This document shows positions 1-47,523 of a DNA stretch of 64,000 nt, one piece after another (the first letter of the stretch is position 1; each line of letters starts with the position of its first letter). Position numbers and translations under genes: made by a program. The stretch comes from Ranitomeya imitator. Its lineage: Eukaryota. The stretch covers positions 219,418,001-219,482,000 of the forward strand of contig NC_091288.1 in the NCBI RefSeq assembly GCF_032444005.1, written 5' to 3'. A model generated the notes under the pieces. The model was not told the DNA's origin. It saw only the letters and a program-made list of their open reading frames with translations, and searched no databases.

Positions 1-1163
1 AAGAAAAACAAGTGGCCATAATTACTTTAAGAAATGAAGGTCAGTCAGTCCAAAAAATTGGGAAAACTTTGAAAGTGTCCCCAAGTGCAATGGCAAAAAC
101 CATCAAGCGCTACAAAGAAACTGGCTCACATGAGGATCGCCCCAGGAAAGGAACACCAAGAGTCACCTCTGCTTCTGAGGATAAGTTTATCCGAGTCACC
201 AGCCTCAGAAATCGCTGTTTAACAGCAGCTCAGATTAGAGACCAGGTCAATGCCACACAGAGTTCTAGCAGCAGACACATCTCTACAACAACTGTTAAGA
301 GGAGACTTTGTGCAGCAGGCCTTCATGGTAAAATAGCTGCTAGGAAACCACTGCTAAGGACAGGAAACAAGCAGAAGAGACTTGTTTGGTCTAAAGAACA
401 CAAGGAATGGACATTAGACCAGTGGAAATCTGTGCTTTGGTCTGATGAGTCCAGATCTTTGGTTTCAACCACCGTGTCTTTGTGCGACGCAGTAAAGGTG
501 AACGGATGGACTCTACATGCCTGGTTCCCACCGTGAAGCATGGAGGAGGAGGTGTGATGGTGTGGGGGGCTTTGCTGGTGACACTGTCGGGGATTTATTC
601 AAAATTGAAGGCATACTGAACCAGCATGGCTACCACAGCATCTTGCAGCGGCATGCTATTCCATCCGGTTTGTGTTTAGTTGGACCATCATTTATTTCTC
701 AACAGGACAATGACCCCCAAACACCTCCAGGCTGTGTAAGGGCTATTTGACCAAGAAGGAGAGTGATGGGGTGCTACACCAGATGACCTGGCCTCCACAG
801 TCACCAGACCTGAACCCAATCGAGATGGTTTGGGGTGAGCTGGACCGGAGAGTGAAGGCAAAAGGGCCGACAAGTGCTAAGCATCTCTGAGAACTCCTTC
901 AAGATTGTTGGAAGACCATTCCCGGTGACTACCTCTTGAAGTTCATCAAGAGAATGCCAAGAGTGTGCAAAGCAGTCAAAGCAAGAAGGTGGCTACTTAG
1001 ACATATTTTCAGTTGTTTCACACTTTTTTGTTAAGTATATAATTCCACATGTGTTAATTCATAGTTTTGATGCCTTCAGTGTGAATGTACAATTTTTCAT
1101 AGTCACGAAAACACAGAAAAATCTTTAAATGAGAAGGTGTGTCCAAACTTTTGGTCTGTACTG
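1..1163 (+). mobile_element. Tc1/mariner (DD34E) transposon, 5'-truncated by the window edge, transposase disabled
   Basis: ORF 12-536 gives the HTH region plus VLWSDE. Later frames give QQDNDP and WPPQSPDLNPIEMVW. Frameshifts near 455, 565 and 720; TGA near 888. The element ends ...CCAAACTTTTGGTCTGTACTG followed by TA (1164-1165), a Tc1-type terminus. Confidence 0.93.
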
Positions 1164-9665: not shown

Positions 9666-10093
9666 GGTCATAGGCGGCTCTACTAAGTACTAAAGAGGTG
9701 AAAGAGGTGAATAATTGTGATTAGAACTGGACGTAATCCTGATGATCCCGTGTAATCATGGCCACCTGCAGCCGTTCTGGGTATCTCCCCGATAGTCTGG
9801 CACATGGTGGCCCCGAAAGTCAATGTTCATTATATCGTCTTGTTTCTGGGATGCCGCCGTGATCCTCCATATTATGTGTCTGTGTGCAGAAAGACTACCT
9901 GTGGTTTGGAATATCCACCAACCAGCAGATCCAGGGGATGCCAGATTACCAGCGTTGATTGCATGGAGCTGTACTGATGGGATTGTTGTCTTTACATCTG
10001 TAGAGTCGTTGTTGTGCCTAGTCAGTAATGGGAGTAAATGGAGGTTGACTGAATTAATCCTGGTCCCCGCTTCTTTTCCAGGCCGCCCCCACC

Positions 10094-11764
10094 ATGTCTT
10101 CGGAGCAGCAGGAATCTGTCGGAGAGATCGAGGTGTTGATCGAGCAGGATCCTGAGGAGTCTCCCAGATTTGTGCAGAGTGGACGTCGCTTTCGCTGTTT
10201 GGCCTGCCGCAAAACCTTCCCAAACCAGCCCCGTGCCAAGCGCCACTGCCGGGTGCACCGCTCAGCTGATGACTCCCAGCCTCCGACACCCAAGACTCCA
10301 GGGCCAAAAAGCGAGCTGCGCCACCAGTGCGTCCACTGCAACAAATCCTACAAAACCGCCTCCCTGCTTAAGAGCCATGGGCGAAGCCACACAGGGGAGA
10401 AGCCGTTCGTATGTAAAGAGTGCGGGCGCTCCTTCATGCAGCCGATATGCCTGCGGGTACACATGGCCACACACAACGGCCAGCTCCCTTTCCAGTGCAG
10501 CCAGTGTGGAAAAGCTTACGCCACGCCGTCAAAGTTGCGCATCCATGAGCGGCTGCACACTGGGGAGCGCCCGTTCTCATGCCCCGATTGTGGGAAGGGG
10601 TTTGCGGACCCGTCTGTTTTTCGGAAGCACCGGCGGAGTCATGCCGGGCTGCGACCTTATCAGTGCAAACTGTGCCAGAAGTCCTATAGCGAGCTGAAGG
10701 ACCTAAAGAACCATGAGCGGAGCCACACGGGGGAGAAGCCTTTCCTGTGTTCGGATTGCGGTAAGGCGTTCTCCCGCGCGTCTTCCCTAACGTGTCATCA
10801 GCGCATTCATGCTGCCGAGAAACCTTACAAGTGCCCTATATGTAACAAAGACTTTACCCAACTGTCCTCCTACCAGAGCCACCAACGCACACACTCCGGG
10901 GAGAAGCCTTACCTGTGCCCTCAGTGCGGCCGCATGTTCTCCGACCCATCTAGTTTCCGGCGGCACCAACGGGCTCACCAGGGCGTGAAGCCGTACCGAT
11001 GCGACAAGTGTGGCAAACCATTCCGGCAGCCGGCTGATTTGGCCATGCACCAGAGAATCCACACGGGTGAGAGGCCCTTCAAATGCCCGGACTGTGACAA
11101 GAGCTTTGTGGCGTCTTGGGACCTGAAGCGGCACCGGCTTTCGCACAGTACGGAGCGGCCCTTCCAGTGCATGGAATGTGGTAAAGGTTTCGCCGAGCGT
11201 TCTGGGCTCAGCAAACACCAACGTTCCCACAGCGGAGAGAGACCCTACAAGTGCGAGGAGTGCAGCAAGACGTTCATCGTCTCGTCAAGTCTACGGAAGC
11301 ACGAACGGACCCACCTGAAGCCCGAAGCGGAGGCCAACAAGAAGAAGGAAGAGTCCATCACCTGCGATACGTGCGCAGTGACCTTCCTGAGCGTGATGGA
11401 CCTGAAGACCCATCAGAGAAACCATCCAGAGCTCAGGCCCTTCCGCTGTGACCAGTGTGACAAGGGCTTTGTGGACAAGGCCGGACTGAAGAAGCACCAA
11501 CGCATTCACAGCGACGTGCGCCCCCACGTGTGCCAACAGTGCGGCAAGGGCTTCCACATCCCCTCCGACCTTCGTAAGCACCAGAAGACACATGACAAGG
11601 AGGTGAAGGGCAAAGAGGAGGAGGAGGAAGAGGAGATCACCACTTTGACCCTCCATCCAGCCTATGTAGAACCTCCGCCGCTCTATGATCCTCTGGTCTC
11701 CTTCTTAGAGAAAGTGACTGAAGGAAACATGGAGGTGATAGAACAGTCGCCCACGTCGAGCTGA
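10094..11764 (+). CDS. ZNF668: Zinc finger protein 668 orthologue, 556 aa, 16 C2H2 fingers, no KRAB domain, CDS in one exon
   Basis: Kozak CCACCATG just after an acceptor at 10081. I counted 16 CxxC...HxxxH fingers. Finger sequences match what I recognise as ZNF668 ([92 protein letters not shown]). The neighbouring STX4/STX1B order agrees. Confidence 0.95.
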
Positions 11765-13900: not shown

Positions 13901-14454
13901 GCAGTGGTCGGTCTCCTAGGCAACGAGCCGTAAGGAAAATAAATCTGTTCATATCTCAGGAACGGTTTCAAATTTTAATAAGTGGTAAATTGCAAAGTTG
14001 CTTGTGTTTCCAGACTCTTCCTGACAATACTCCTCTATGGAGATGTGGAATTACCCTTTAAGCATTCCGCGCACATACAAACGGATGTTGGCCGTTTAAA
14101 GGGGCCATTAATGACCTGCTAGTCTTCAAGATACCTCCTTATATTCGAGCAGCTGCATCAGACGTAAAGCCTGCCCACGGCCTGAAATGGCTGATAACAG
14201 AGAGCAATGGATTGGATTCACCATCCAGTAGTCATGTGCTGTTTAAATCTCTGAGTAATTGATCCGTCCGCCTGTAGATCCTTTTAACTCTCTATTGCTT
14301 GTTACCTGCTGTGGTGCATTATGGGAGAGGCCGAGCTGATTGCAGCTTTGGATGTGACTGGAGTGGAAGACCTGTGGCGATCAGTACCAGGAAAGCAGAC
14401 GTCACTCCACAATGTAGGCGGATTTCTCCTGTAATTGGTGATCAGCGGAGTGCC

Positions 14455-17400
14455 ACGTCTCACTGCCCGTCACTGTACTGCTGTCACCTCAGCCTCCTCT
14501 CTGCCTGTCACTGTACTGCTGTCACCTCAGCCTCCTCTCTGCCTGTCACTGTGCTGCTGTCACCTCAGCCTCCTCTCTGCCTGTCACTGTGCTGCTGTCA
14601 CCTCAGCCTCCTCTCTGCCTGTCACTGTGCTGCTGTCACCTCAGCCTCCTCTCTGCCTGTCACTGTGCTGCTGTCACCTCAGCCTCCTCTCTGCCTGTCA
14701 CTGTGCTGCTGTCACCTCAGCCTCCTCTCTGCCTGTCACTGTACTGCTGTCACCTCAGCCTCCTCTCTGCCTGTCACTGTACTGCTGTCACCTCAGCCTC
14801 TTCTCTGCCTGTCACTGTACTGCTGTCACCTCAGCCTCCTCTCTGCCTGTCACTGTGCTGCTGTCACCTCAGCCTCCTCTCTGCCTGTCACTGTACTGCT
14901 GTCACCTCAGCCTCCTCTCTGCCTGTCACTGTACTGCTGTCACCTCAGCCTCCTCTCTGCCTGTCACTGTGCTGCTGTCACCTCAGCCTCTTCTCTGCCC
15001 GTCACTGTGCTGCTGTCACCTCAGTCTCCTCTCTGCCTGTCACTGTGCTGCTGTCACCTCAGCCTCCTCTCTGCCTGTCACTGTGCTGCTGTCACCTCAG
15101 CCTCCTCTCTGCCTGTCACTGTACTGCTGTCACCTCAGCCTCCTCTCTGCCTGTCACTGTACTGCTGTCACCTCAGCCTCCTCTCTGCCTGTCACTGTGC
15201 TGCTGTCACCTCAGCCTCCTCTCTGCCTGTCACTGTGCTGCTGTCACCTCAGCCTCCTCTCTGCCTGTCACTGTGCTGCTGTCACCTCAGCCTCTTCTCT
15301 GCCTGTCACTGTGCTGCTGTCACCTCAGTCTCCTCTCTGCCCGTCACTGTGCTGCTGTCACCTCAGCCTCCTCTCTGCCTGTCACTGTACTGCTGTCACC
15401 TCAGCCTCCTCTCTGCCTGTCACTGTGCTGCTGTCACCTCAGTCTCCTCTCTGCCTGTCACTGTGCTGCTGTCACCTCAGCCTCCTCTCTGCCGGTCACT
15501 GTGCTGCTGTCACCTCAGTCTCCTCTCTGCCTGTCACCTCAGCCTCCTCTCTGCCTGTCACTGTGCTGCTGTCACCTCAGTCTCCTCTCTGCCTGTCACC
15601 TCAGCCTCCTCCCTGCCTGTCACTGTACTGCTGTCACCTCAGTCTCCTCTCCTCCTGTCACTGTGCTGCTGTCACCTCAGTCTCCTCTCTGCCTGTCACC
15701 TCAGCCTCCTCTCTGCCTGTCACTGTACTGCTGTCACCTCAGCCTCCTCTGCCCGTCACTGTACTGCTGTCACCTCAGCCTCCTCTCTGCCTGTCACTGT
15801 GCTGCTGTCACCTCAGCCTCCTCTCTGCCTGTCACTGTGCTGCTGTCACCTCAGCCTCCTCTCTGCCTGTCACTGTGCTGCTGTCACCTCAGCCTCCTCT
15901 CTGCCTGTCACTGTGCTGCTGTCACCTCAGCCTCCTCTCTGCCTGTCACTGTACTGCTGTCACCTCAGCCTCCTCTCTGCCTGTCACTGTGCTGCTGTCA
16001 CCTCAGCCTCCTCTCTGCCTGTCACTGTACTGCTGTCACCTCAGTCTCCTCTCTGCCTGTCACTGTACTGCTGTCACCTCAGTCTCCTCTCTGCCTGTCA
16101 CTGTGCTGCTGTCACCTCAGTCTCCTCTCTGCCCGTCACTGTGCTGCTGTCACCTCAGTCTCCTCTCTGCCTGTCACTGTGCTGCTGTCACCTCAGCCTC
16201 CTCTCTGCCTGTCACTGTGCTGCTGTCACCTCAGTCTCCTCTCTGCCTGTCACTGTGCTGCTGTCACCTCAGCCTCCTCTCTGCCTGTCACTGTGCTGCT
16301 GTCACCTCAGTCTCCTCTCTGCCCGTCACTGTGCTGCTGTCACCTCAGTCTCCTCTCTGCCTGTCACTGTGCTGCTGTCACCTCAGTCTCCTCTCTGCCT
16401 GTCACTGTGCTGCTGTCACCTCAGCCTCCTCTCTGCCTGTCACTGTACTGCTGTCACCTCAGCCTCCTCTCTGCCTATCACTGTGCTGCTGTCACCTGTC
16501 TCCTCTCTGCCTGTCACTGTGCTGCTGTCACCTCAGTCTCCTCTCTGCCTGTCACTGTACTGCTGTCACCTCAGTCTCCTCTCTGCCTGTCACTGTGCTG
16601 CTGTCACCTCAGTCTCCTCTCTGCCTGTCACTGTACTGCTGTCACCTCAGTCTCCTCTCTGCCTGTCACTGTGCTGCTGTCACCTCAGTCTCCTCTCTGC
16701 CTGTCACTGTACTGCTGTCACCTCAGTCTCCTCTCTGCCTGTCACTGTGCTGCTGTCACCTCAGTCTCCTCTCTGCCTGTCACTGTACTGCTGTCACTCC
16801 TCTCTGCCTGTCACTGTACTGCTGTCACCTCAGCCTCCTCTCTGCCTATCACTGTGCTGCTGTCACCTGTCTCCTCTCTGCCTGTCACTGTGCTGCTGTC
16901 ACCTCAGTCTCCTCTCTGCCTGTCACTGTACTGCTGTCACCTCAGTCTCCTCTCTGCCTGTCACTGTACTGCTGTCACCTCAGTCTCCTCTCTGCCTGTC
17001 ACTGTGCTGCTGTCACCTCAGTCTCCTCTGCCTGTCGCTGTGCTGCTGTCTCTTCAGTCTCCTCTCTGCCTGTCACTGTGCTGCTGTCCTCAGTCTCCTC
17101 TCTGCCTGTCACTGTACTGCTGTCACCTCAGTCTCCTCTCTGCCCGTCACTGTCCTGCTGTCACCCCAGCCTTCTCTCTGCCCGTCACTGTACTGCTGTC
17201 ACCTCAGTCTCCTCTCTGCCCGTCACTGTACTGCTGTCACTCCTCTCTGCCTGTCACTGTACTGCTGTCACCTCAGTCTCCTCTCTGCCCGTCACTGTGC
17301 TGCTGTCACCTCAGTCTCCTCTCTGCCTGTCACTGTGCTGCTGTCACCTCAGTCTCCTCTCTGCCTGTCACTGTATTGCTGTCACCTCAGCCTCCTCTCT

Positions 17401-17540
17401 GCCTGTCACTGTGCTGCTGTCACCTCAGCCTCCTCTCTGCCTGTCACTGTGCTGCTGTCACCTCAGTCTCCTGCCTGTCACTGCGCTGCTGTCACCTGTC
17501 TCCTCCCTGCCTGTCACTGTGCTGTCACCTCAGTCTCCTC
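14455..17540. repeat. Minisatellite, 38-bp unit CTGTCACCTCAGCCTCCTCTCTGCCTGTCACTGTGCTG (left block)
   Basis: Period of 38 (GTCACC at 14521 and 14559). Confidence 0.97.
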
Positions 17541-17567
17541 CCTTATATACTTAACTATATAAACATG

Positions 17568-18020
17568 TAAAACATGTAAACTTGAAAACACGAAATTTGA
17601 ACTGCATTACTGCACTAGAAATATGAAAAATGAGAGCTTTTAGCGCATAAAAATGGCCAATTTTATGCGTACCTGGTAGCCCCGTTACGGCATCTCTCTT
17701 ATACCAGGTTCTCTAGCCTTCTGATCGTGCACTCCCCGCCTCCTAGCTTCAGGTGTTTTAATTACAACAGGTCCAATACCCCTCCACAGAGAGAGAGAAT
17801 TTTAGTCTAGGAAGAGGTTTTCACATGTACCCATTCAGATGGAGACGTTTATTCTCAGCGAGGTAAGGCAAGCGTAGGACCTGGTATAAGAGAGATGCCG
17901 TAAAGTGGCTACCAGGTACACATAAAATTGGCCATTTTTATGCGCTAAAAGCTCTCATTTTTCATATTTCTAGTGCAGTAATGCAGTTCAAATTTCGTGT
18001 TTTCAAGTTTACATGTTTTA
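17568..18020. mobile_element. Non-autonomous inverted-repeat element (MITE), 453 bp with ~142-bp terminal inverted repeats
   Basis: 17568-17709 (TAAAACATGTAAACTTGAAAACACG...ATACCAGGT) is the reverse complement of 17879-18020 with about 3 mismatches, around a 169-bp unique core. It begins and ends in TA. Confidence 0.88.
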
Positions 18021-18049
18021 GCGCTGCAGTGTGCTGCCCTATTTACTTA

Positions 18050-19005
18050 ACTGTCACTGTGCTGCTGTCACCTCAGTCTCCTCTCTGCCTGTCACTGTGC
18101 TGCTGTCACCTCAGCCTCCTCTCTGCCTGTCACTGTGCTGCTGTCACCTCAGTCTCCTCTCTGCCCGTCACTGTGCTGCTGTCACCTCAGTCTCCTCTCT
18201 GCCTGTCACTGTGCTGCTGTCACCTCAGTCTCCTCTCTGCCTGTCACTGTGCTGCTGTCACCTCAGCCTCCTCTCTGCCTGTCACTGTGCTGCTTTCACC
18301 TCAGTCTCCTCTCTGCCCGTCACTGTACTGCTGTCACCTCAGTATCCTCTCTGCCTGTCACTGTACTGCTGTCACCTCAGTCTCCTCTCTGCCAGTCGCT
18401 GTACTGCTGTCACCTCAGTCTCCTCTCTGCCCGTCACTGTGCTGCTGTCACCTCAGCCTCCTCTCTGCCTGTCACTGTGCTGCTGTCACCTCAGTCTCCT
18501 CTCTGCCCGTCACTGTGCTGCTGTCACCTCAGTCTCCTCTCTGCCCGTCACTGTGCTGCTGTCACCTCAGTCTCCTCTCTGCCCGTCACTGTGCTGCTGT
18601 CACCTGTCTCCTCTCTGCCTGTCACTGTGCTGCTGTCACCTCAGCCTCCTCTCTGCCCGTCACTGTGCTGCTGTCACCTCAGCCTCCTCTCTGCCCGTCA
18701 CTGTGCTGCTGTCACCTCAGTCTCCTCTCTGCCCGTCACTGTACTGCTGTCACCTCAGCCTCCTCTCTGCCTGTCACTGTACTGCTGTCACCTCAGCCTC
18801 CTCTCTGCCTGTCACTGTGCTGCTGTCACCTCAGTCTCCTCTCTGCCTGTCACTGTGCTGCTGTCACCTCAGTCTCCTCTCTGCCCGTCACTGTGCTGCT
18901 GTCACCTCAGCCTCCTCTCTGCCTGTCACTGTACTGCTGTCACCTCAGCCTCCTCTCTGCCTGTCACTGTGCTGCTGTCACCTCAGTCTCCTCTCTGCCT
19001 GTCTC
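18050..19005. repeat. 38-bp minisatellite (right block, same unit and orientation as 14455-17540)
   Basis: The same unit resumes after the MITE. Confidence 0.96.
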
Positions 19006-19444: not shown

Positions 19445-20292
19445 TAATACAAGATCGTTATAAAAAAAAAAGAGAAACACTGAATGGTGCGGTCAGTGTG
19501 AGCTCCACGGACATGAGAAACCTCCAGCATTATAGGAGCCGGGACAGTCCATGAGCACGCAGCACCCTCACCTCGCCGGCATGGCTGACATCGGGGGTCA
19601 TTACAAGATCAAAGTGCAAGCTCCTCCCTGGTGACTGGTCCGGACACAGCCAGAGCTGCATTCACAATTCTGCCGCAGTGTGAGATGTAGTGTTTAATCC
19701 AGTAATGGGACGTAGGACACTACAGTTCCCAGGGGGCCGTGCGTCCTGGCGTCTCGGGGTGTGGACGGTGCTGACGGATCCCAGGCAGCTACCAGCAAAA
19801 TGGTGTCTGGAGCTGCGGCAGTGACCGGACCGTGACTGACCGTTACGTGGATTTAACCTGTAAAAAACCGTATAAAAGTGAAGCCGCTCGTTACATAAAT
19901 TACGCCAAGAATTAAAAAGAACAAGAGACAGCGACTGAGCGACACCTCATCCCCCGCACAATGTCATGGCCGCCCTGGCACCAGCAGGGGGCAATGTGTG
20001 GACCTGAGAGCACTCGCCAGGGCCGGGCTATGTACAGTGATGGAGGCAGCGACGCTCGCACACGCAGACTGACATCTATAATGGTAAAGTATAAGGCACA
20101 CTCGGAAATCGCACACAATGTCGGTGGTCGGTTACCATGGGAAGTCAGTTACCCTCCCCGAGCCCCAGCAGAGACCACCGGGCCTGTACTCAGGAGCCAT
20201 GCGGAGCTGTCCCCCGCGGGGAGCAGGACGGCATCGCTGCGTGATACAGGTATAGATGGGGTGGGGGGAACAGGGGTCCTCGTCTGCTCCTC

Positions 20293-20373
20293 TCAGGTCG
20301 TCAGGGACACCGTGATGATGAGGACAACGACAATGATGAAAATGGCCAAGCAGATGGCGATGTAGACTTTCTT
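20293..20373 (-). CDS. STX4: STX4 exon 10 ([26 protein letters not shown], transmembrane anchor)
   Basis: Acceptor CTCTCTGCAG|AAG; TGA at 20293-20295. Confidence 0.93.
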   Translation of the reverse strand, partial: KKVYIAICLAIFIIVVVLIITVSLTT

Positions 20374-23300
20374 CTGCAGAGAGAAGAGATGGCTGTGTAA
20401 AACGCACAGGGCATACGGGCACAGGGCATACGGGCACAGGTCATCTCCGGGTCTCACCTTCCGCGCCTTCTGTCTGTTGTCCACCGCCTGGTCCAGCTGT
20501 TTCTTGGCTTTTTCCACATAATCCGTAGAATGTAAAATATTCTTCTCGATGCTGTTTATCGTCTCCCCCTGAGACGGGACAAGAATCAGGACAAGGTAAG
20601 AGGACACGGGCAGCAGAGCCAGGGAGGACTCAACCATTCACAAGCCTCATACCTGCGCCTCCACCTCCATGGCGAGGTACATGAACATCTCGTGAAGCTC
20701 CACAATGCTCTTCTCCAGCTTCAGGATCTCCTCGTGCCGAGCTTCGATTTCATTCAGGGCCTGTTTAGTGACCTGTGTGTCCTTCAGGATCTGCACAAAA
20801 AAAACCACCGGTCACAGTGTGTCCTACTACCAACATCCCAAATTACCTCCAGTGCGCAGGCATCGTACACTAACCCGGGCCCATCTGCCCCATCACAACA
20901 CGCAACATCCTGCACCAATCCCCAACACGTCCTCCAACACTTCCCAATGCTTTCTCAGATGGCCGCGACTTTCACCAATCCCCAATGCTTCCTCTAGCCC
21001 CACATGACTCCCCCAACACTCCCTCATCCTCCACCAATGCAAAATGCTCCCTCCTGCGGCCTCATCCTACACCAACGCCCAACCCTCCCACATCCGCCAT
21101 CAACCCCCCACGCTCCCTCATCCTCCTCCAATGCAAAATGCTCCTCTCCTGCGGCCGCAACCTACACCAACGCCCAACCCTCCACGCTCCCAACCCTCCC
21201 ACATCCGCCATCAACCCCCCACGCTCCCTCATCCGCTCCCAACCCTCCCACATCCGCCATCAACCCCCCACGCTCCCTCATCCTCCACCAATGCAAAATG
21301 CTCCTCTCCTGCGGCCGCAACCTACACCAACGCCCAACTCTCCCACATCCGCCATCAACCCCCCACGCTGCCAACACTCCCTCATCCTCCACCAAAACCC
21401 AACTCTCCCTCCACCAACGCCCAATGCTTCCTCATCTGCCAAGCTCCCTTATCCGCCACCAACACTCCCTCATCCTCCACCAACGCCCCAAACTCCCTCA
21501 TCCACCCCAAACACACCTCATCCTCCACCAACGCCGAATGCTCCCTAATTTGTCCCTAATGCTCAGCGCTCCCTCATCCGCCACCAATCCCCAACGCTTC
21601 CTCATGCTGCACCAATGCCCAACGCTCCCTCATCCGCCACCCATGCCCAACACTCCCTCATCCGCCACCCATGCCCAACACTCCCTCATCCGCCACCCAT
21701 GCCCAACGCTCCCTCATCCGCCACCAGCCACTCCCTCCCCCAGTACTCATCAACACTCCCTTCAGCTCCCATATCCTCCAATCACCATTACTCCCTATGG
21801 CTCCCACATCCTCCATGTAAGACTGACACCAACCACAGCCTCCCACAATCCTCCCAGTTCTGTTGATTGCTCACAATCGCACCGCCTCTTACATTGCTGG
21901 TGAACACGTCCGTCTGTCCACTCTCCAGCATCTCATCAAACTGCTCGTCCGTGACACTGTGGCCGGCTGTGAAGGAAAAACAGGAAGGTAAATGGCGCCC
22001 TCCACCCGTCACACTACAGGTGCATGAATGTTCAGCAACGACTACTACCCCCAGCGTACAGCAGGAGTGGGAACATACTGATCTGGAGCTGCCGCTTGAT
22101 CCTATTCACGTTGTTCTCTCTGTACTGCGTCTGCACCATGTTACACTGGTTTAGGATTTCGAAGAATTGCTGAGAGAGGACGGAGTGCTGCAAGACAAGA
22201 CGGTCTGATAAATGAACCTGAGCGCAGGGGTGAAGCCCCCACACAACCTCCATGAAGGGTCATTAGGACGATACCTGAGTCTTCTTCATCCGCAGGTGCA
22301 CCGACTTCCTCACCTCCTCCTCATCGTCCTTTATCTCAATGACTGTAATGACGGAGGAACCAAGGTGAGACGGCGACAGGGGAAGGACTCCCACCCACCA
22401 CAGGCACCAGGACCTAACAACCAGCCTAAATCCCCCACAAAACACCCGGACCCTCACAACCTAAGTCCTGACATGGACCACAAGCATGAAGTGATCACCC
22501 CCATACCAGGCCCCGATCACCAGCCCTAACCGTCTCACCACCGGGACTCGTGCTAGTCTGCGTCATCAGCTATAGCCCTCAAGAGCGGAGTCAGCTCCCC
22601 ACCAAAGCAGCAGCCCCAACTCCTCCACCATGGGCCCCCCCCCCCAAGCGCCAGGCCAAACTCTTCCAGCCCGGGCCCCCCAAAATGCCAGCCCAAACTC
22701 CTCCACCACGGGCCCCCGAAAGCAGCAGCCCCAACTCCTCCACCACGGGCCCCCGAAAGCACCAGCCCCAACTCCTCCACCATGGGCCCCCCGAAAGCAC
22801 CAGCCCCAACTCCTCCACCATGGGCCCCCCGAAAGCACCAGCCCCAACTCCTCCACCATGGGCCCCCCCAAGTGCCAGCCCCAACTCCTCCACCATGGCC
22901 CCCCCCCCCCCCCAAGTGCCATCCCAAACTCCTCCACCATGGGCCCCCCCAAGTGCCATCCCAAACTCCTCCACCATGGGCCCCCCCAAGTGCCAGCCCC
23001 AACTCCTCCACCATGGCCCCCCCCCCCCCCCCCCCCCAAGTGCCAGCCCAAACTCCTCCACCATGGCCCCCCCCCCCCCCAAGTGCCAGCCCAAACTCCT
23101 CCACCATGGGCCCCCCAAGTGCCATCCCAAACTCCTCCACCATGGGCCCCCCAAGTGCCAGCCCAAACTCCTCCACCATGGGCCCCCCCAAGCGCCAGGC
23201 CAAACTCTTCCAGCCCGGGCTCCCCAAAATGCCATCCTTAACTCATCCACCATGGGCAACCCCCCCCCCCCCCCCCAAGCGCCAGCCCTATGGCCCTCCA

Positions 23301-26300
23301 AGCACCAGCCCTAACACCTCTACCCCAGGCCCTAAGCAATAAATTCAGGAGGTCTGTAATCCTAATCCTCCACAGGTCCGCCAAGTACCGGCCATTACCC
23401 CCCCCACCAAAGCGCCAACCCCAAGCCCTTACCCAAAGGCTTTCCCTTACCCATAAACTCAGACCCCCTATCGTCACAGTGCACTTACGCTGCAGTTTAC
23501 TCCGAATTTCCTTTGCGATACGTTTTATCTCTTCCCTCAAAGATTGTAAATCTTTCTTCATATCTGAGAACAGAAAGAAGCACCGAGATTAATGACCGCC
23601 CCGAGCTGCCGACCCCCGCAGCTGCTGACCGCCCCGAGCTGAACCCACCCCCCGCAGCTGCTGACCGCCCCGAGCTGAACCCACCCCCCGCAGCTGCTGA
23701 CCGCCCCGAGCTGAACCCACCCCCCGCAGCTGCTGACCGCCCCGAGCTGAACCCACCCCCCGCAGCTGCTGACCGCCCCGAGCTGAACCCACCCCCCGCA
23801 GCTGCTGACCGCCCCGAGCTGAACCCACCCCCCGCAGCTGCTGACCGCCCCGAGCTGAACCCACCCCCCGCAGCTGCTGACCACCCCGAGCTGAACCCAC
23901 CCCTCGCAGCTGCTGACCGCCCGAGCTGAACCCACCCCCCGCAGCTGCTGACCTCCCCGAGCTGAACCCACCCCCCGCAGCTGCTGACCGCCCCGAGCTG
24001 AACCCACCCCCCGCAGCTGCTGACCGCCCCGAGCTGAACCCACCCCCCGCAGCTGCTGACCGCCCCGAGCTGCCGACCCCCCGCAGCTGCTGACCGCCCC
24101 GAGCTGAACCCACCCCCCGCAGCTGCTGACCGCCCAGAGCTGAACCCACCCCCCGCAGCTGCTGACCGCCCCGAGCTGCTGAACCCACCCCCCGCAGCTG
24201 CTGACCGCCCGAGCTGAACCCACCCCCTGCAGCTGCTGACCACCCCGAGCTGAACCCACCCCTCGCAGCTGCTGACCGCCCGAGCTGAACCCACCCCCCG
24301 CAGCTGCTGACCTCCCTGAGCTGAACCCACCCCCCGCAGCTGCTGACCGCCCCGAGCTGAACCCACCCCCCGCAGCTGCTGACCGCCCCGAGCTGAACCC
24401 ACCCCCCGCAGCTGCTGACCGCCCCGAGCTGCCGACCCCCCGCAGCTGCTGACCGCCCCGAGCTGAACCCACCCCCCGCAGCTGCTGACCGCCCAGAGCT
24501 GAACCCACCCCCCGCAGCTGCTGACCGCCCAGAGCTGAACCCACCCCCCGCAGCTGCTGACCGCCCCGAGCTGCTGAACCCACCCCCCGCAGCTGCTGAC
24601 CGCCCGAGCTGAACCCACCCCCTGCAGCTGCTGACCTCCCCGAGCTGAACCCACCCCCCGCAGCTGCTGACCGCCCCGAGCTGAACCCACCCCCGCAGCT
24701 GCTGACCGCCCCGAGCTGAACCCACCCCCCGCAGCTGCTGACCGCCCGAGCTGAACCCACCCCCCGCAGCTGCTGACCGCCCGAGCTGAACCCACCCCCC
24801 GCAGCTGCTGACCTCCCCGAGCTGAACCCACCCCCCGCAGCTGCTGACCGCCCCGAGCTGAACCCACCCCCCACAGCTGCTGACCGCCCCGAGCTGAACC
24901 CACCCCCCGCAGCTGCTGACCTCCCCGAGCTGCTGAACCCACCCCCGCAGCTGCTGACCTCCCCGAGCTGAACCCACCCCCCCGCAGCTGCTGACCGCCC
25001 CGAGCTGCTGAACCCACCCCCCCGCAGCTGCTAACCTCCCCGAGCTGCTGAACCCACCCCCCGCAGCTGCTGACCGCCCCGAGCTGAACCCACCCCCCGC
25101 AGCTGCTGACCGCCCCGAGCTGCTGAACCCACCCCCCGCAGCTGCTGACCGCCCCGAGCTGAACCCACCCCCCGCAGCTGCTGATCGCCCCAAGCTGCTG
25201 AACCCACCCCCCGCAGCTGCTGACCGCCCCAAGCTGCTGAACCCACCCCCCGCAGCTGCTGACCGCCCCGAGCTGCTGAACCCACCCCCCGCAGCTGCTA
25301 ACCTCCCCGAGCTGCTGAACCCACCCCCCGCAGCTGCTGACCGCCCCGAGCTGAACCCACCCCCCGCAGCTGCTGACCGCCCCGAGCTGCTGAACCCACC
25401 CCCCGCAGCTGCTGACCGCCCCGAGCTGCTGAACCCACCCCCCGCAGCTGCTGACCGCCCCAAGCTGCTGAACCCACCCCCCGCAGCTGCTGACCGCCCC
25501 GAGCTGAACCCACCCCCCGCAGCTGCTGACCGCCCCGAGCTGCTGAACCCACCCCCCGCAGCTGCTGACCGCCCCGAGCTGAACCCACCCCCCGCAGCTG
25601 CTGACCGCCCCGAGCTGCCCCCCCCCCCAGCAGCTGCTGACCGCCCCGAGCTGAACCCACCCCTCGCAGCCGCTGACCGCCCCGAGCTGCCGCCCCACTC
25701 CCCACCCCCCGGAGCTGCCGACCACCCCGAGCTGCCACCAGCCCCCCTCCCCGGAGCTGCCGGCCACCTTGAGGCGCTGACATCTCCGAGCCGCCGACCG
25801 ATGTAAGAAATAACTGTGGATAGGAGCCGTGCAGAGTCACCGCGTCACAGGTGCAGTACGATTGTACCGAAATATGGAGAGGGGCAGAGCATGTGATGAG
25901 CGCCAGCTGCTGTGCAGAACTCATGGCCACCGCAGGGGGTGCAGGAGAGGTGGTCGCAGCAGCCGCTGCCCATTACCTGCCGGCCACGCCACTTACTGTC
26001 ATCCGGGAGCGGCTGGCTCAGGATCTTCACCTGACTGGACTCCAGCTCGGCCACTTTGCTGCTCAGGATGCCCATCGATTCCCGAATATCACGAGTCTAA
26101 GGAAAGAGACAATGGTGGTGAGGAGCGGCGCCCCCCGCTGGCTACTATGCACAGGACACCAGTCAGTACCATCCTGAAGAACTGGTGGTCCGTCTCAGAT
26201 TCGTCGCTGCCGCCATTCGACATCGAGATGAAAACTTTCTGCTCATCGGGCTCCGAGTCGCTGTCACCCTGAAACAAGACGGGGGTAAGAACAACGTGAC

Positions 26301-28630
26301 CAGAGGAGGAAACCCACCGAACACCGGACAGGAGGGGTCCGCGGCCTGAGGAGACTTTCCCCGGACCCCTCATCACTGGCCTCTTCTTAAGACGTGTAGT
26401 CCTACAGGGGCAGAGTGCTGGGACGTGTAGTCCTACAGGGGCAGAGCACGCTGGGACGTGTAGTCCTACAGGGGCAGAGTGCTGGGACGTGTAGTCCTAC
26501 AGGGGCAGAGCGTGCTGGGACGTGTAGTCCTACAGGGGCAGAGCGTGCTGGGACGTGTAGTCCTACAGGGGCAGAGTGCTGGGACGTGTAGTCCTACAGG
26601 GGCAGAGCACGCTGGGACGTGTAGTCCTACAGGGGCAGAGTGCTGGGACGTGTAGTCCTACAGGGGCAGAGCGTGCTGGGACGTGTAGTCCTACAGGGGC
26701 AGAGCGCTGGGACGTGTAGTCCTACAGGGGCAGAGTGGGCTGGGACGTGTAGTCCTACAGGGGCAGAGTGGGCTGGGACGTGTAGTCCTACAGGGGCAGA
26801 GCGTGCTGGGACGTGTAGTCCTACAGGGGCAGAGCGCTGGGACGTGTAGTCCTACAGGGGCAGAGTGGGCTGGGACGTGTAGTCCTACAGGGGCAGAGCG
26901 CTGGGACGTGTAGTCCTACAGGGGCAGAGTGGGCTGGGACGTGTAGTCCTACAGGGGCAGAGTGGGCTGGGACGTGTAGTCCTACAGGGGCAGAGTGCTG
27001 GGACGTGTAGTCCTACAGGGGCAGAGTGCTGGGACGTGTAGTCCTACAGGGGCAGAGCGTGCTGGGACGTGTAGTCCTACAGGGGCAGAGCGTGCTGGGA
27101 CGTGTAGTCCTACAGGGGCAGAGTGCTGGGACGTGTAGTCCTACAGGGGCAGAGCACGCTGGGACGTGTAGTCCTACAGGGGCAGAGTGCTGGGACGTGT
27201 AGTCCTACAGGGGCAGAGCGTGCTGGGACGTGTAGTCCTACAGGGGCAGAGCGCTGGGACGTGTAGTCCTACAGGGGCAGAGTGGGCTGGGACGTGTAGT
27301 CCTACAGGGGCAGAGTGGGCTGGGACGTGTAGTCCTACAGGGGCAGAGTGGGCTGGGACGTGTAGTCCTACAGGGGCAGAGTGGGCTGGGACGTGTAGTC
27401 CTACAGGGGCAGAGTGCTGGGACGTGTAGTCCTACAGGGGCAGAGAGTGCTGGGACGTATAGTCCTACAGGGGCAGAGCGCTGGGACGTGTAGTCCTACA
27501 GGGGCAGAGCGCTGGGACGTGTAGTCCTACAGGGGCAGAGTGGGCTGGGACGTGTAGTCCTACAGGGGCAGAGTGCTGGGACGTGTAGTCCTACAGGGGC
27601 AGAGCGTGCTGGGACGTGTAGTCCTACAGGGGCAGAGCGCTGGGACGTGTAGTCCTACAGGGGCAGAGTGGGCTGGGACGTGTAGTCCTACAGGGGCAGA
27701 GTGCTGGGACGTGTAGTCCTACAGGGGCAGAGTGCTGGGACGTGTAGTCCTACAGGGGCAGAGTGCTGGGACGTGTAGTCCTACAGGGGCAGAGTGCTGG
27801 GACGTGTAGTCCTACAGGGGCAGAGTGCTGGGACGTGTAGTCCTACAGGGGCAGAGTGCTGGGACGTGTAGTCCTACAGGGGCAGAGCGTGCTGGGACGT
27901 GTAGTCCTACAGGGGCAGAGTGCTGGGACGTGTAGTCCTACAGGGGCAGAGTGCTGGGACGTGTAGTCCTACAGGGGCAGAGCGTGCTGGGACGTGTAGT
28001 CCTACAGGGGCAGAGTGCTGGGACGTGTAGTCCTACAGGGGCAGAGTGCTGGGACGTGTAGTCCTACAGGGGCAGAGAGTGCTGGGACGTGTAGTCCTAC
28101 AGGGGCAGAGCACGCTGGGACGTATAGTCCTACAGGGGCAGGGAGTGCTGGGACGTGTAGTCCTACAGGGGCAGAGCGGGCTGGGACGTGTAGTCCTACA
28201 GGGGCAGAGCACGCTGGGACGTATAGTCCTACAGGGGCAGGGAGTGCTGGGACGTGTAGTCCTACAGGGGCAGAGTGCTGGGACGTGTAGTCCTACAGGG
28301 GCAGAGAGTGCTGGGACGTGTAGTCCTACAGGGGCAGAGAGTGCTGGGACGTGTAGTCCTACAGGGGCAGAGCACGCTGGGACGTATAGTCCTACAGGGG
28401 CAGGGAGTGCTGGGACGTGTAGTCCTACAGGGGCAGAGCGGGCTGGGACGTGTAGTCCTACAGGGGCAGAGCACGCTGGGACGTGTAGTCCTACAGGGGC
28501 AGGGAGTGCTGGGACGTGTAGTCCTCCAGCCGCAGTGGTCAGTCCGGGCAGTGTGGAGGCCGCCCCCGCTGTCACCCGTCGCCCCCTGCTGGCCGCTCAC
28601 CGCGCTCAGCTCCTTGGTCCGGTCCCTCAT
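20293..28630 (-). CDS. STX4: Syntaxin-4, complete 10-exon CDS, 885 nt / 294 aa (spliced span)
   Basis: complement(join(28601-28630, 26170-26268, 25997-26096, 23489-23563, 22275-22342, 22079-22187, 21893-21966, 20653-20790, 20458-20568, 20293-20373)). All introns are GT-AG and the phases are compatible. Protein: [19 protein letters not shown]...Habc...[57 protein letters not shown] (SNARE)...[26 protein letters not shown] (TM anchor). ILKDTQVT and MRDRT are STX4-type as I recognise them. Confidence 0.95.
20458..20568 (-). CDS. STX4: STX4 exon 9 ([10 protein letters not shown]...RQKARK)
   Basis: 111 nt; TCTCAG| acceptor and |GTGAGA donor. Confidence 0.94.
20653..20790 (-). CDS. STX4: STX4 exon 8 (ILKDTQVT...EVEAQ, SNARE motif)
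   Basis: 138 nt; TTTTGTGCAG| acceptor and |GTATGA donor. Confidence 0.95.
20900..21830. repeat. Degenerate C-rich minisatellite filling STX4 intron 7
   Basis: Recurrent CCCTCATCC(T/G)CCACCAA / GCCCAAC motifs with irregular period. Confidence 0.75.
21893..21966 (-). CDS. STX4: STX4 exon 7 ([25 protein letters not shown])
   Basis: 74 nt; TTCACAG| acceptor and |GTAAGA donor. Confidence 0.93.
22079..22187 (-). CDS. STX4: STX4 exon 6 ([16 protein letters not shown]...KRQLQI)
   Basis: 109 nt; CTTGCAG| acceptor and |GTATGT donor. Confidence 0.94.
22275..22342 (-). CDS. STX4: STX4 exon 5 ([22 protein letters not shown])
   Basis: 68 nt; ATTACAG| acceptor and |GTATCG donor. Confidence 0.9.
22600..23290. 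repeat. C-rich minisatellite, ~33-36-bp unit CCCCAACTCCTCCACCATGGGCCCCCCCAAGTGCCAG, in STX4 intron 4
   Basis: Tandem copies with a variable poly-C tract. Confidence 0.92.
23489..23563 (-). CDS. STX4: STX4 exon 4 ([24 protein letters not shown])
   Basis: 75 nt; TTCTCAG| acceptor and |GTAAGT donor. Confidence 0.94.
23593..25740. repeat. Minisatellite, 36-bp unit GCTGAACCCACCCCCCGCAGCTGCTGACCGCCCCGA, in STX4 intron 3
   Basis: Period of 36 (GAAC at 23641 and 23677), with 35-39-bp variants. Confidence 0.97.
25997..26096 (-). CDS. STX4: STX4 exon 3 ([33 protein letters not shown])
   Basis: 100 nt; TTCCTTAG| acceptor and |GTAAGT donor. Confidence 0.92.
26170..26268 (-). CDS. STX4: STX4 exon 2 ([10 protein letters not shown]...DHQFFRM)
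   Basis: 99 nt; GTTTCAG| acceptor and a weaker |GTACTG donor. It keeps frame with exons 1 and 3. Confidence 0.85.
26391..28524. repeat. Minisatellite, 31-33-bp unit GGGACGTGTAGTCCTACAGGGGCAGAG(T/CG/CAC/TGG)GCT, in STX4 intron 1
   Basis: About 65 tandem copies; the invariant core GGGACGTGTAGTCCTACAGGGGCAG is visible throughout. Confidence 0.98.
28601..28630 (-). CDS. STX4: STX4 exon 1 coding part ([10 protein letters not shown])
   Basis: ATG at 28630-28628; |GTGAGC donor at 28600; syntaxin N-peptide. Confidence 0.92.
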
Positions 28631-29340
28631 TCTGCCTCCGGATAGTTTCACGGTCACTCCTCTCGATCACTTCTCAGAACTTAGTTTCTCCTACTTCCAC
28701 TGCTACTGCGCATGCTCTGCTCCGGCCACGCCCACTGCACCCTTCCTGCGACTGAAGAGCCATAGAGGCGAGCGGGGCGCCCTGTGCGGAGGATGCTGGG
28801 ATACTGGAGGACCGGAGCTGCGGGTGTGCCGGAGCGGTGTAATGACGGGAGTGCGGGCCGGGACGAGTAACGGTGTATAATCAGCTTATATCAGTCCTGT
28901 AAAATATAATGTTTTATTATAATACAAAAGAGTGATGACGTCACCTGACTGCTGAGGGCTGTGATTGGCTGCATTCGTCAGGTGACTGCTCCAAGCCACC
29001 TGGTCTGAGCGGCCAATCAGAGGCTGCAGTGGTCAGGTGACTTACTGTGTGGAGCCCCCCGGAGCGGCCATTACTGGGGGCGAGAGCGGCAGATGTTCTC
29101 CTGTCATAACCGTCCCTGAAATTGTGACAGGCGACGACGCATTTAAGGCCATTGCTTCACTAATAGCCCGAGTGTTGTGGAGACACGAGACGCCGAGGAG
29201 AAGACACCTCCAGGACGAGGCGCGGTGACGTCTCCGGTGTCCCCTCACAGGAGCCGACCAGCACACGGGGTCACAGGACATTGATGGCCCAGCGAGCAGC
29301 ACAGCGCCCTGTAGTGGCCGCACTCTGCTACTGCGCAATA
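28631..29340. promoter_or_regulatory. STX4 5'UTR/promoter CpG island
   Basis: CpG-rich. NRF1-like TGCGCATGC (28707-28715); CRE TGACGTCA (28936-28943); ATTGG at 28964 and CCAAT at 29013; GTCAGGTGAC x3. Confidence 0.7.
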
Positions 29341-29373
29341 GAACTACACAGCGCTGTGCTGATCCGGGACTAA

Positions 29374-29777
29374 AGGTCCCATCACACTGAGCAACTTACC
29401 AACGAGAACGACAGCGATCCGTGACGTTGCAGCGTCCTGGATAGCGATCTCGTTGTGTTTGACACGCAGCAGCGATCAGGATCCCGCTGTGACATCGCTG
29501 GTCGGAGCTAGAAGGCCAGAACTTTATTTCGTCGTCAGGTCGGCGTGATTCGTCATGTTTGACAGCAAAAGCAACGATGCCAGCAATGTTTTACATGGAG
29601 CAACAACCAGCGAGAACGATAAGCGAGTCGCCGTTACGTCACTGGATCGCTCCTGCATCGTTCTGGAGTTGTTGTGTTTGACGTCTCTACAGCGACCTAA
29701 ACAGCGACGCTGCAGCGATCTAGTGTAGGTCAGACATTGTCTATATCGCTGCAGCGTCGCTAAATGTGACGGTACCT
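29374..29777. mobile_element. MITE with short TIRs and TAA target-site duplication (PIF/Harbinger-like)
   Basis: TAA|AGGTCCCATCACACT ... AATGTGACGGTACCT|TAA (TAA at 29371-29373 and 29778-29780). A TWA duplication is characteristic of PIF/Harbinger elements. Confidence 0.72.
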
Positions 29778-29904
29778 TAAGGAAGGGTCATCAGGATCAC
29801 AGAACCGGAGAGGCCTCCTAGTAAACACTGTCCATTGTCCTGTGCTCACAGTCATGTCCAACCAGTACGTGACATCATCATCACCTGTCACTGACTCTGC
29901 CCTC

Positions 29905-47012: not shown

Positions 47013-47143
47013 NNNNNNNNNNNNNNNNNNNNNNNNNNNNNNNNNNNNNNNNNNNNNNNNNNNNNNNNNNNNNNNNNNNNNNNNNNNNNNNNNNNNNNNN
47101 NNNNNNNNNNNNNNNNNNNNNNNNNNNNNNNNNNNNNNNNNNN
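47013..47143. other. Assembly gap (131 N)
   Basis: Run of N characters. Confidence 1.
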
Positions 47144-47523
47144 TACATAGCTCCCAGATATCTATTCCTGGCCATATGCTTTGCAGATGCTGAGGCTGGT
47201 GAGACTACAACTCCCGTGATCCCCCGGGGCCCCTGCACTCGGCGCATGCGCTCTGGATCTCCGCTCTGTCTCTTTCTCCCGCATCTTCGTCTGCAGCAGC
47301 AGCATCAGCACCAGAGCAGCAGAGCCGCGTCCTCCGCCGCATCCTCCGCCGCCCGCTGCTGCCCGCGCTCCGAGCTGCCGCTGCCCGCCGCCCCCGTGCC
47401 CGCAGCGCCCCGTCCCCGGGCTCCCGTGTGCCCGCACCGTCCCCGGCACCAGCGCCCCCCCGGACTCTGCAGCAGTGAGGGGGGAGTAGTCACCATCGTC
47501 AGTGCCCGCAGGAAGGAAGAAGC
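47144..47523 (+). promoter_or_regulatory. STX1B proximal promoter / 5'UTR CpG island
   Basis: Very GC/CpG-rich; NRF1 palindrome GCGCATGCGC at 47242-47251; CAG-rich leader. It ends in AGCATG at the start codon. Confidence 0.7.

What the first reader, a model, noticed from the sequence alone, without database searches (positions are those of the whole stretch)
26391..28524. STX4 intron 1 is a ~65-copy tandem array of the THAP11/ZNF143 promoter motif
Seen: on the STX4 sense (minus) strand nearly every unit reads GGACTACACGTCCCAGC. The array begins about 75 bp inside intron 1, next to the promoter CpG island. Established: ACTAYRNNNCCCR / ACTACAnnTCCCAG is a highly conserved vertebrate promoter motif bound by THAP11 (Ronin)-HCF1 and ZNF143, normally in one or a few copies near a TSS. 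Here the match is perfect, extends into the CCCAGC half used by ZNF143, and is invariant while the spacer half of the unit varies. Inference: a single promoter-proximal site was amplified into a 2.1-kb homotypic cluster. It could act as a copy-number-tunable enhancer or a factor sink. Each copy carries a CpG in the NN positions, so methylation could switch the whole array.
Basis: partly seen in the sequence, partly recalled or inferred. Interest (0 to 1): 0.72.

Follow-up and report, generated by a model that had tools for sequence, protein, structure and literature searches.

The report
Conserved THAP11-motif minisatellite in frog STX4
Intron 1 of a poison frog's syntaxin-4 gene is almost entirely a 66-copy tandem repeat of a known promoter motif, and three other frog families carry the same repeat at the same spot with the motif letters unchanged over roughly 70 million years while the spacers changed, so the copies are probably used, although no protein binding has been shown.

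Summary
Window 26391-28529 (minus strand) holds 66 full units plus one truncated unit of 31 or 33 bp. It starts 71 nt into STX4 intron 1 and fills 92% of that intron. All 66 units match the M4 motif, and 62 match the THAP11 site ACTACANNTCCCA.

Invariance inside this array says little, because most of the spacer is just as invariant. The informative evidence comes from other species. Homologous arrays sit at the same place in Eleutherodactylus coqui (5 units), Dendropsophus ebraccatus (24) and Engystomops pustulosus (53). All 13 specified motif positions are identical in the four lineages, the two N positions vary, and 17 of 20 other columns differ (Fisher p = 1e-6). The ranoid Mantella has a loose, decaying cluster. 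Spea has none.

So the array is old (Hyloidea crown, 67-77 Ma), not a private amplification. In this frog the ZNF143-specific 3' half is degraded, so the units are THAP11-type sites only. The CpG in each unit is specific to this lineage, so a methylation switch is not a conserved feature.

Binding, chromatin state and any effect of copy number are untested. Two more arrays of the same motif were noted earlier in this genome by the scan but were not followed up.

The parts
26391..28529 (-). Minisatellite of 66 full units plus 1 truncated unit (31 or 33 bp). Every unit carries an M4/THAP11-type motif in the sense orientation of STX4.
28530..28600 (-). 5' flank of intron 1, starting at the donor (28600). 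At about 28567-28586 it holds the decayed remnant of a 'first copy' (G-run plus ACTACAAG) that four other neobatrachian frogs still carry about 20 nt after the donor. The last 19 nt resemble a unit tail with 3 mismatches.
26269..26390 (-). 3' flank of intron 1, up to the acceptor. The array exits in mid-motif.
28601..28721 (-). STX4 exon 1 (ATG at 28630, 10 codons). The 5' limit given is only as far as the RNA contig reaches.
26170..26268 (-). STX4 exon 2 (33 codons).
28785..28802 (-). Single-copy SBS1-type (Staf/ZNF143) site of the STX4 promoter. It has 2 mismatches to the STAF consensus and lies in a block conserved in all six frogs compared, Spea included.
20296..26096 (-). The remaining STX4 coding exons (3 to the last, stop near 20296), with unrelated minisatellites in later introns.

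Best explanation
The array is an old minisatellite at the 5' end of STX4 intron 1 that evolves by concerted evolution. Its unit began as a full SBS2 element, meaning a THAP11 site (ACTACANNTCCCA) overlapping a Staf/ZNF143 site.

Shown here:
- A multi-copy array with the same unit layout sits at the same position in four hyloid frog families. Copy numbers are 5, 24, 53 and 66.
- Units are homogenised within each species.
- Between species, the 13 specified positions of the THAP11 site never change, while the N positions, the ZNF143 3' half and the spacer change freely.

Inferred:
- At least some copies are working binding sites. A variant that destroys the motif is removed before it can sweep through the array.
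- The array most likely acts as a promoter-proximal docking platform, from about +0.2 to +2.3 kb, for THAP11 with HCF-1. ZNF143/Staf may bind weakly, or not at all, in this species. The platform would modulate STX4 transcription.
- The direction of the effect is unknown. It could be activation, or roadblock-type attenuation as described for ZNF143 bound just downstream of start sites.
- Copy number probably drifts by unequal exchange, because the locus lies in a subtelomeric, minisatellite-prone region. 55% of this window is tandem arrays.
For: Orthologous position and flanks:
- Exon 1, the donor, a degenerate first copy and then the array align across species (A1).
- Arrays start 71-106 nt after the donor.

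Motif counts:
- 66 M4 motifs in the window, 5 in E. coqui, 53 in Engystomops, 24 in Dendropsophus.

Cross-species conservation:
- In the consensus alignment, 13 of 13 specified THAP11-site positions are invariant, against 3 of 20 other columns. Fisher p = 9.8e-7.
- Within arrays these 13 positions show no polymorphism, except 4 of 66 ACTATA units in the window.
- All six cross-species pairs of these units rank in the top 14 of 621 array-unit pairs.
- No other STX4 minisatellite is alignable between species.

Age:
- The Hyloidea crown is dated at 67-77 Ma (PMC7823230).
- Mantella (Ranoidea) has a loose cluster of 7 ACTACA copies in the first 900 bp of intron 1, mostly with a broken CCC. Spea has none.

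Literature on the motif:
- The THAP11 DNA-binding domain binds ACTACANNTCCCA. ZNF143 needs the 3' half (PMC3627581).
- The ACTAYR module engages THAP11/HCF-1 (PMC5006282).
- Ronin assembles housekeeping promoters (PMC10329844).
- ZNF143 bound within 500 bp downstream of a start site can repress (10.1101/2024.05.13.594008).
Against: - There are no binding, accessibility, methylation or expression data for any of these frogs.
- In mammals the THAP11 site is reported to be always linked to a ZNF143 site. According to a review, THAP11/HCF-1 are guided to ZNF143-occupied loci (PMC7154149). THAP11-only units, as in this frog and in Dendropsophus, may therefore be poorly occupied.
- Copy number ranges from 5 to 66, which argues against a strict dosage requirement.
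- In Mantella the motif is decaying, so any constraint is not universal.
- Only four hyloid species could be read. The dendrobatid, Bufo, Hyla and Rana loci returned no DNA.
- Spacer alignment across species is uncertain. This somewhat inflates the count of variable columns.
Confidence: 0.55

Rival explanations
1. The array is a neutral by-product. One functional site is under selection, and the tandem copies are selectively irrelevant products of slippage and unequal exchange in a repeat-prone subtelomeric region. The motif survives in all units only because homogenisation ties them to the selected copy.
For: - The window holds about 20 unrelated minisatellites covering 55% of its length.
- The STX4 loci of the other frogs are also full of arrays and lie near chromosome ends.
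- Copy number varies 13-fold between lineages.
- Earlier follow-ups judged the CTCF and CRE motif arrays of this genome to be ordinary expansions.
Against: - The multi-copy state is kept in 4 of 4 readable hyloids over about 70 My, whereas no other minisatellite of the gene is shared.
- The non-array 'first copy' has lost its CCC half in all hyloids, so no obvious single selected copy exists outside the array.
Confidence: 0.3
2. Unit-level drive. Amphibians lack PRDM9, so meiotic breaks should go to promoter-like open chromatin. Units that bind the factor stay open, attract breaks and are copied preferentially. The motif is then kept by biased turnover rather than by any benefit to the frog.
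For: - PRDM9 was not found in amphibians, and species without it direct recombination to promoter-like features (PMC5519329).
- The array sits next to a CpG-rich promoter in distal chromosome regions.
- The same genome has other promoter-side arrays of transcription-factor motifs.
Against: - This is purely inferential. No recombination map or break data exist for these species.
- It still requires that the units are bound, so it overlaps with the main explanation.
Confidence: 0.1
3. Transposon-seeded array. The ancestral copy came from an arm of a dispersed element that carries the SBS2 motif, and the array is just that arm expanded.
For: - Mantella has two hairpin-like elements whose inverted arms are near-canonical SBS2 motifs, at L006 2635/2708 and 6285/6361.
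- MLT1J elements carry SBS2 in mammals.
- Earlier follow-ups traced the CTCF arrays of this genome to transposon arms.
Against: - There is no dispersed copy of the unit, and no inverted partner, in the window or in four hyloid loci.
- Word depth in the DNA runs is only about 14-20 times single copy.
- The first copy has a fixed position about 20 nt after the donor in all neobatrachians compared.
- An old transposon origin would not contradict later constraint on the motif.
Confidence: 0.1
4. RNA-level element. The repeated sequence works in the pre-mRNA, for example as a protein-binding or splicing-control repeat, and not as DNA.
For: The motif has the same orientation relative to the gene in all species. 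One contig shows intron-start and array sequence contiguous with exon 1.
Against: - The conserved letters coincide exactly with the specified positions of a DNA-binding motif, and the variable ones with its N positions.
- There is no Rfam match.
Confidence: 0.03

Closest known systems
SBS2 / M4 promoter element (THAP11-HCF-1 and ZNF143/Staf site)
   Same: Each unit is an exact M4 match, and 62 of 66 are exact THAP11-site matches. The location is next to a CpG-rich housekeeping promoter that also has its own conserved SBS1 site. Conservation falls on the specified positions only.
   Different: Known sites occur singly or a few at a time near start sites. Here there are 5-66 head-to-tail copies in an intron. 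In this frog the ZNF143 3' half is degraded, whereas in mammals a THAP11 site is reported to be always linked to a ZNF143 site.
Regulatory minisatellites / tandem-repeat enhancers (promoter VNTRs from general knowledge; the tandem-repeat enhancer repressed by MORC3, PMC13373173, abstract only)
   Same: A unit of tens of bp, variant-unit interspersion, block duplications, and multiplied transcription-factor motifs beside a gene.
   Different: Most described VNTRs are young and lineage-specific. This one is shared by frog families that split about 70 Ma, with the motif conserved and the spacer turned over. No functional data exist here.
Other motif-bearing minisatellites of this genome (CTCF and CRE arrays; earlier scan notes)
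   Same: The same genome, the same kind of promoter-side or first-intron arrays, and the same repeat-dense context.
   Different: Those arrays were judged young, or seeded by transposon arms. For the STX4 array, cross-family homology and motif-specific conservation were shown here.
Transposon-borne SBS2 motifs (MLT1J in mammals; hairpin-like elements seen in Mantella)
   Same: They carry the same composite motif.
   Different: They are dispersed single elements, not tandem arrays. No dispersed relative of the unit was found in the hyloid sequences examined.

Membership tests
M4 / THAP11-binding site | Sequence ACTAYRNNNCCCR, or more strictly ACTACANNTCCCA | tested here: met
   66 of 66 units match M4 and 62 of 66 match the strict form.
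M4 / THAP11-binding site | Promoter-proximal position, within roughly -2.5 kb to +0.5 kb of a start site (PMC5006282) | tested here: inconclusive
   The array starts about 200 nt downstream of the 5' end of the RNA contig but runs on to about +2.3 kb. Contigs cannot fix the true start site.
M4 / THAP11-binding site | Conservation of the motif between species | tested here: met
   The 13 specified positions are invariant in four hyloid families.
M4 / THAP11-binding site | Occupancy by THAP11/HCF-1 | not testable with these tools
   No frog ChIP or CUT&RUN data were available.
SBS2 (ZNF143/Staf site with ACTACA extension) | An 18-nt STAF core (YWCCCRNMATSCMYYRCR) directly after ACTACAN | tested here: not met
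   Window units have 4-8 mismatches out of 17 specified positions. In 39 of 66 units the 3' half scores at or only marginally better than random sequence. The window's real sites have 0-2 mismatches. The feature is met in Engystomops (1 mismatch) and E. coqui (1-3), judged from the consensus units.
Minisatellite / VNTR | Head-to-tail units of 10-100 bp with interspersed variant units and block duplications | tested here: met
Minisatellite / VNTR | Length polymorphism within the species | tested here: inconclusive
   One contig passes through only 2.4 units. It may be a collapsed assembly path or a short allele. STX4 coding spans of 5.9-17 kb in four dendrobatoid assemblies hint at length differences.
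Transposon-arm-derived array | Dispersed copies of the unit with flanks, or an inverted partner arm | tested here: not met
   None in the window or in hyloid loci L001-L004.
CpG island | CpG observed/expected above about 0.6 with high GC | tested here: not met
   The array has o/e 0.46-0.58 and GC 0.62. The adjacent promoter has o/e 0.8-0.9.

The most novel reading that the evidence does not exclude
Frogs may carry a class of deeply conserved minisatellites whose repeat unit is a THAP11/ZNF143 binding site. These would be kept for tens of millions of years as multi-site docking platforms next to housekeeping promoters. The STX4 array would be the first documented member, and the two other ACTACAnnTCCCA arrays noted in this genome would be further members. 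Copy number would be a naturally variable regulatory dial, and the arrays might be born and maintained because, without PRDM9, bound promoter sites are also recombination hotspots.
Probability: 0.3. Interest if true: 0.75.

Novelty: new variant of a known kind. Interest (0 to 1): 0.6.

Why it matters
Minisatellites are usually treated as short-lived neutral DNA, and transcription-factor motifs inside them are treated as coincidences. In this case the motif letters inside a repeat unit stayed fixed in four frog families over roughly 70 My while the rest of the unit turned over.

That is the signature expected of working binding sites. It also provides a natural copy-number series (5, 24, 53, 66) and a natural contrast between full SBS2 units and THAP11-only units.

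Three open questions become directly testable:
- whether THAP11 can be recruited without a competent ZNF143 half-site;
- whether homotypic site number tunes promoter output;
- whether promoter-type recombination in animals lacking PRDM9 creates and maintains such arrays.

Tried and rejected
- The ORF running from the last units through exon 2 (window:26092-26496:-) found no relatives.
- Bufo gargarizans isoform X2 is not on record. Ranitomeya variabilis, Dendrobates tinctorius, Phyllobates terribilis, Anomaloglossus and Rana temporaria returned gene spans but no DNA, because the files were too large. The closest relatives of the window species therefore could not be read.
- The Pristimantis locus does not reach exon 1.
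- The spliced STX4 protein was never joined. Exon-bearing ORFs were searched one at a time by reference, and full-length frog proteins were reached through a protein that a tool had returned.
- The large representative protein search was not used.
- The array itself was not given to read laying, because that tool turns away long repeats. Only 28400-29900 was laid.
The comparison was redone by running TRF on the stored files.
- The supplement of PMC3627581 is not held, and a paper search for STX4 with ZNF143 gave nothing relevant, so it is unknown whether mammalian STX4 is a listed target. PMC4648815 is not held.
- The Rfam scan of the window was empty.
- Rejected: assembly artefact. Junction and array words are present in two DNA runs, and arrays appear in five independent assemblies.
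- Rejected: genome-wide satellite. Word depth is only about 14-20 times the single-copy flank.
- Rejected: a conserved methylation switch. The CpG occurs only in this lineage.
- The N run at 47013-47143 was left untouched.
Full report
**1. What is in the window**

TRF finds one array at 26391-28529 (period 33, 66.5 copies, 92% matches). On the minus strand, which is the STX4 sense strand, it splits into 66 full units of 31 or 33 bp plus a last unit cut after 12 nt. The pattern ACTACANNTCCCAG occurs 62 times inside the array, against 0.01 expected by chance. The other four units read ACTATA, so all 66 units fit M4, ACTAYRNNNCCCR.

The gene model is sound. Exon-bearing ORFs on the minus strand match frog syntaxin-4 proteins from exon 1 (ATG 28630, donor 28600) down to the stop near 20296. 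Intron 1 is 2332 nt, and the array makes up 92% of it, starting 71 nt after the donor.

Each ORF was used by reference, and full-length frog proteins were reached through a protein that a tool had returned.

**2. Evidence from sequencing reads**

Only the flank 28400-29900 was laid on reads, because the tool turns away long repeats.

- A 1852-nt contig from a probable RNA run covers 28721-28600 and then leaves the stretch, as a spliced mRNA would. The array is therefore intronic.
- A DNA run of the same species and a DNA skim of a second, very close organism both carry the flank-to-unit junction. Their array words are only about 14-20 times the single-copy depth. The neighbouring dispersed repeat at 29369-29827 reaches 1e5-1e6. 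The unit is therefore not a genome-wide satellite.
- One 1999-nt contig of unknown library type runs from the CDS start through 2.4 units. It stops fitting exactly in the phase where the array exits into its 3' flank. This is either a collapsed graph path or a short allele, and I could not decide which.

**3. Why invariance inside this array proves little**

The ten unit types differ only in 2-7 nt directly 3' of CCCAGC and at one C/T in ACTACA. The other 11 spacer positions are as invariant as the motif. Nine of the ten types recur, and a 10-unit block is duplicated. This pattern means recent homogenisation, not constraint.

The context is also repeat-prone. About 20 unrelated minisatellites cover 55% of the 64 kb.

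**4. The ZNF143 half**

The published STAF consensus has 18 nt (PMC5006282). The window's real sites fit it well. The STX4 promoter site at 28785-28802 has 2 mismatches, a site at 14310-14327 has none, and a promoter at 47211 has 2.

The array units have 4-8 mismatches. In 39 of 66 units the 3' half has 5-7 mismatches in 11 positions, against 6.5 expected for random sequence. The ZNF143 DNA-binding domain does not bind the THAP11 site alone, whereas the THAP11 domain does (PMC3627581). By sequence, then, this frog's units are THAP11-type sites and not full SBS2 sites. ZNF143 tolerates degenerate flanks around its TGGGA core (10.1101/2024.05.13.594008), so weak binding cannot be excluded.

**5. 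Other frogs: the decisive evidence**

A word search with the exon 9-10 ORF returned frog syntaxin-4 fragments. A second search with one of them returned full-length proteins from many annotated frogs. Loci with DNA were obtained for:

- Eleutherodactylus coqui (L002)
- Pristimantis (L001, which does not reach exon 1)
- Engystomops pustulosus (L003)
- Dendropsophus ebraccatus (L004)
- Spea bombifrons (L005)
- Mantella aurantiaca (L006)

.

In E. coqui, Engystomops and Dendropsophus, a tandem array of a homologous unit starts 80-106 nt after the exon 1 donor:

| Species | Units | Unit length |
|---|---|---|
| E. coqui | 5 | 37 bp |
| Engystomops | 53 | about 43 bp |
| Dendropsophus | 24 | 40 bp |

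All units are in the sense orientation. Exon 1, the donor and a degenerate first copy about 20 nt into the intron align across species, which confirms orthology (A1).

The units are collinear: motif, then a related 3' stretch, then the same kind of junction back into the next motif. The arrays therefore most likely descend from one ancestral array and not from four independent duplications.

The consensus units give the key result. The 13 specified positions of ACTACA..TCCCAGC are identical in all four lineages. The two N positions read CG, TG, TC and TG. Only 3 of 20 other columns are invariant (Fisher p = 9.8e-7). Within each array these 13 positions are also free of polymorphism, apart from the four ACTATA units in the window.

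As a control, all six cross-species pairs of these units rank in the top 14 of 621 array-unit comparisons. No other minisatellite of the gene is alignable between species. blastn finds only exons, the promoter, 3' UTR pieces and this array.

Mantella (Ranoidea) has seven loosely spaced ACTACA copies in the first 900 bp of intron 1, most with a broken CCC. Spea (Pelobatoidea) has none.

Using published dates (Hyloidea crown 67-77 Ma; Neobatrachia versus Pelobatoidea 169-185 Ma; PMC7823230), the array is at least as old as the hyloid radiation. A multi-copy cluster may go back to early neobatrachians.

**6. What changed along the lineages**

Engystomops units are near-perfect full SBS2 sites, with 1 mismatch to the STAF core. 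E. coqui units have 1-3 mismatches. Dendropsophus (7) and the window (4-8) have lost the 3' half.

The rarer unit types at the promoter end of the window array are the ones most like the E. coqui unit. This suggests small deletions produced the now dominant 31-bp type.

The CpG in the N positions exists only in the window lineage. There are 95 CpG in this array, against 7 in 2.5 kb in Engystomops and 3 in 1.1 kb in Dendropsophus. A methylation switch therefore cannot be the conserved function.

**7. The promoter proper**

Upstream of exon 1 lie two CCAAT boxes, a CRE, the SBS1-type site and an NRF1-like box. The SBS1 block is conserved in all six frogs, Spea included (A2). STX4 thus has its own single-copy Staf-type promoter site, and the intronic array is a second, separate element.

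**8. Interpretation**

Shown: an ancient, homologous, homogenising array with motif-specific conservation.

Inferred: at least some units are functional binding sites, most likely for THAP11 with HCF-1. The array probably acts as a promoter-proximal multi-site platform. The sign of its effect is open, since Ronin assembles housekeeping promoters but factors bound just downstream of start sites can act as roadblocks.

Whether multiplicity itself matters is not shown. The main rival is that only the motif is selected and copy number is neutral drift in a subtelomeric, recombination-rich setting. The locus lies within 1-15 Mb of a chromosome end in five assemblies.

A further rival is unit-level drive through promoter-type recombination, since PRDM9 was not found in amphibians (PMC5519329). 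A transposon seed is possible in deep time, because Mantella has hairpin-like elements with SBS2 arms, but it is not supported in hyloids.

**9. Novelty**

I found no paper describing tandem arrays of this motif. The scan had noted two more such arrays in this genome, but they were not followed up. It had also noted several CTCF and CRE arrays that were judged ordinary expansions.

I file this as a new variant of a known kind, namely a regulatory-motif minisatellite. What sets it apart is deep conservation of the motif core.

Noticed in passing
window 1-64000: About 20 unrelated minisatellites (units of 16-69 bp, arrays of 0.3-4.5 kb) cover 35.2 kb, which is 55% of the window. The STX4 loci of the other frogs are similarly array-rich and lie near chromosome ends.
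   Followed up: partly
window 29369-29827: A dispersed repeat of very high copy number. Summed word depth is 1e5-2e6 in a DNA run whose single-copy depth is about 9, and it is also abundant in the three other runs.
   Followed up: no
window 47204-47260 (+): A normal single-copy version of the same motif: ACTACA followed by a STAF-like core (2 mismatches), then a perfect GCGCATGCGC (NRF1-type) box and CpG-rich sequence, directly after the N run at 47013-47143. This is probably the promoter of a plus-strand gene.
   Followed up: partly
window 14310-14327 (-): A perfect match to the 18-nt STAF consensus without an ACTACA extension, beside the 4.5-kb array at 14459-19003. Its target gene is unknown.
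   Followed up: no
window 19719-19731 (+): A solitary exact M4 match about 580 nt beyond the STX4 stop codon, on the opposite strand. From the length of the mRNA contig it probably lies inside the STX4 3' UTR. Two 40-nt blocks nearby (19593-19673) are conserved in E. coqui and Dendropsophus.
   Followed up: partly
window about 9760-11700 (+): Minus-strand ORFs here show the repeated antisense pattern of C2H2 zinc-finger linkers, so a zinc-finger gene lies on the plus strand. It is probably the counterpart of the single-exon gene of 553-557 aa found downstream of STX4 in four other frogs.
   Followed up: no
window 28447-28629, run X3: A 1999-nt contig at depth 98 carries the CDS start, the unspliced intron start and only 2.4 units. 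It stops fitting in the exit phase of the array. It is either a collapsed path or a 2-3-unit allele.
   Followed up: partly
L006 2635-2708 and 6285-6361 (Mantella): Two copies of a hairpin-like dispersed element whose inverted arms are near-canonical SBS2 motifs. One lies upstream of the STX4 promoter and one in intron 2.
   Followed up: partly
window 23593-25768 and L004 4834-7042: Intron 3 of STX4 holds a 2-kb minisatellite both in this frog and in Dendropsophus, with units of similar length (36 and 35 bp) but no alignable sequence. This is a useful neutral comparator for the intron 1 array.
   Followed up: partly
L003 5480-7530 (Engystomops): A second, unrelated 38-bp array of 54 units directly abuts the motif array, so intron 1 in Engystomops is almost entirely two minisatellites.
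   Followed up: no
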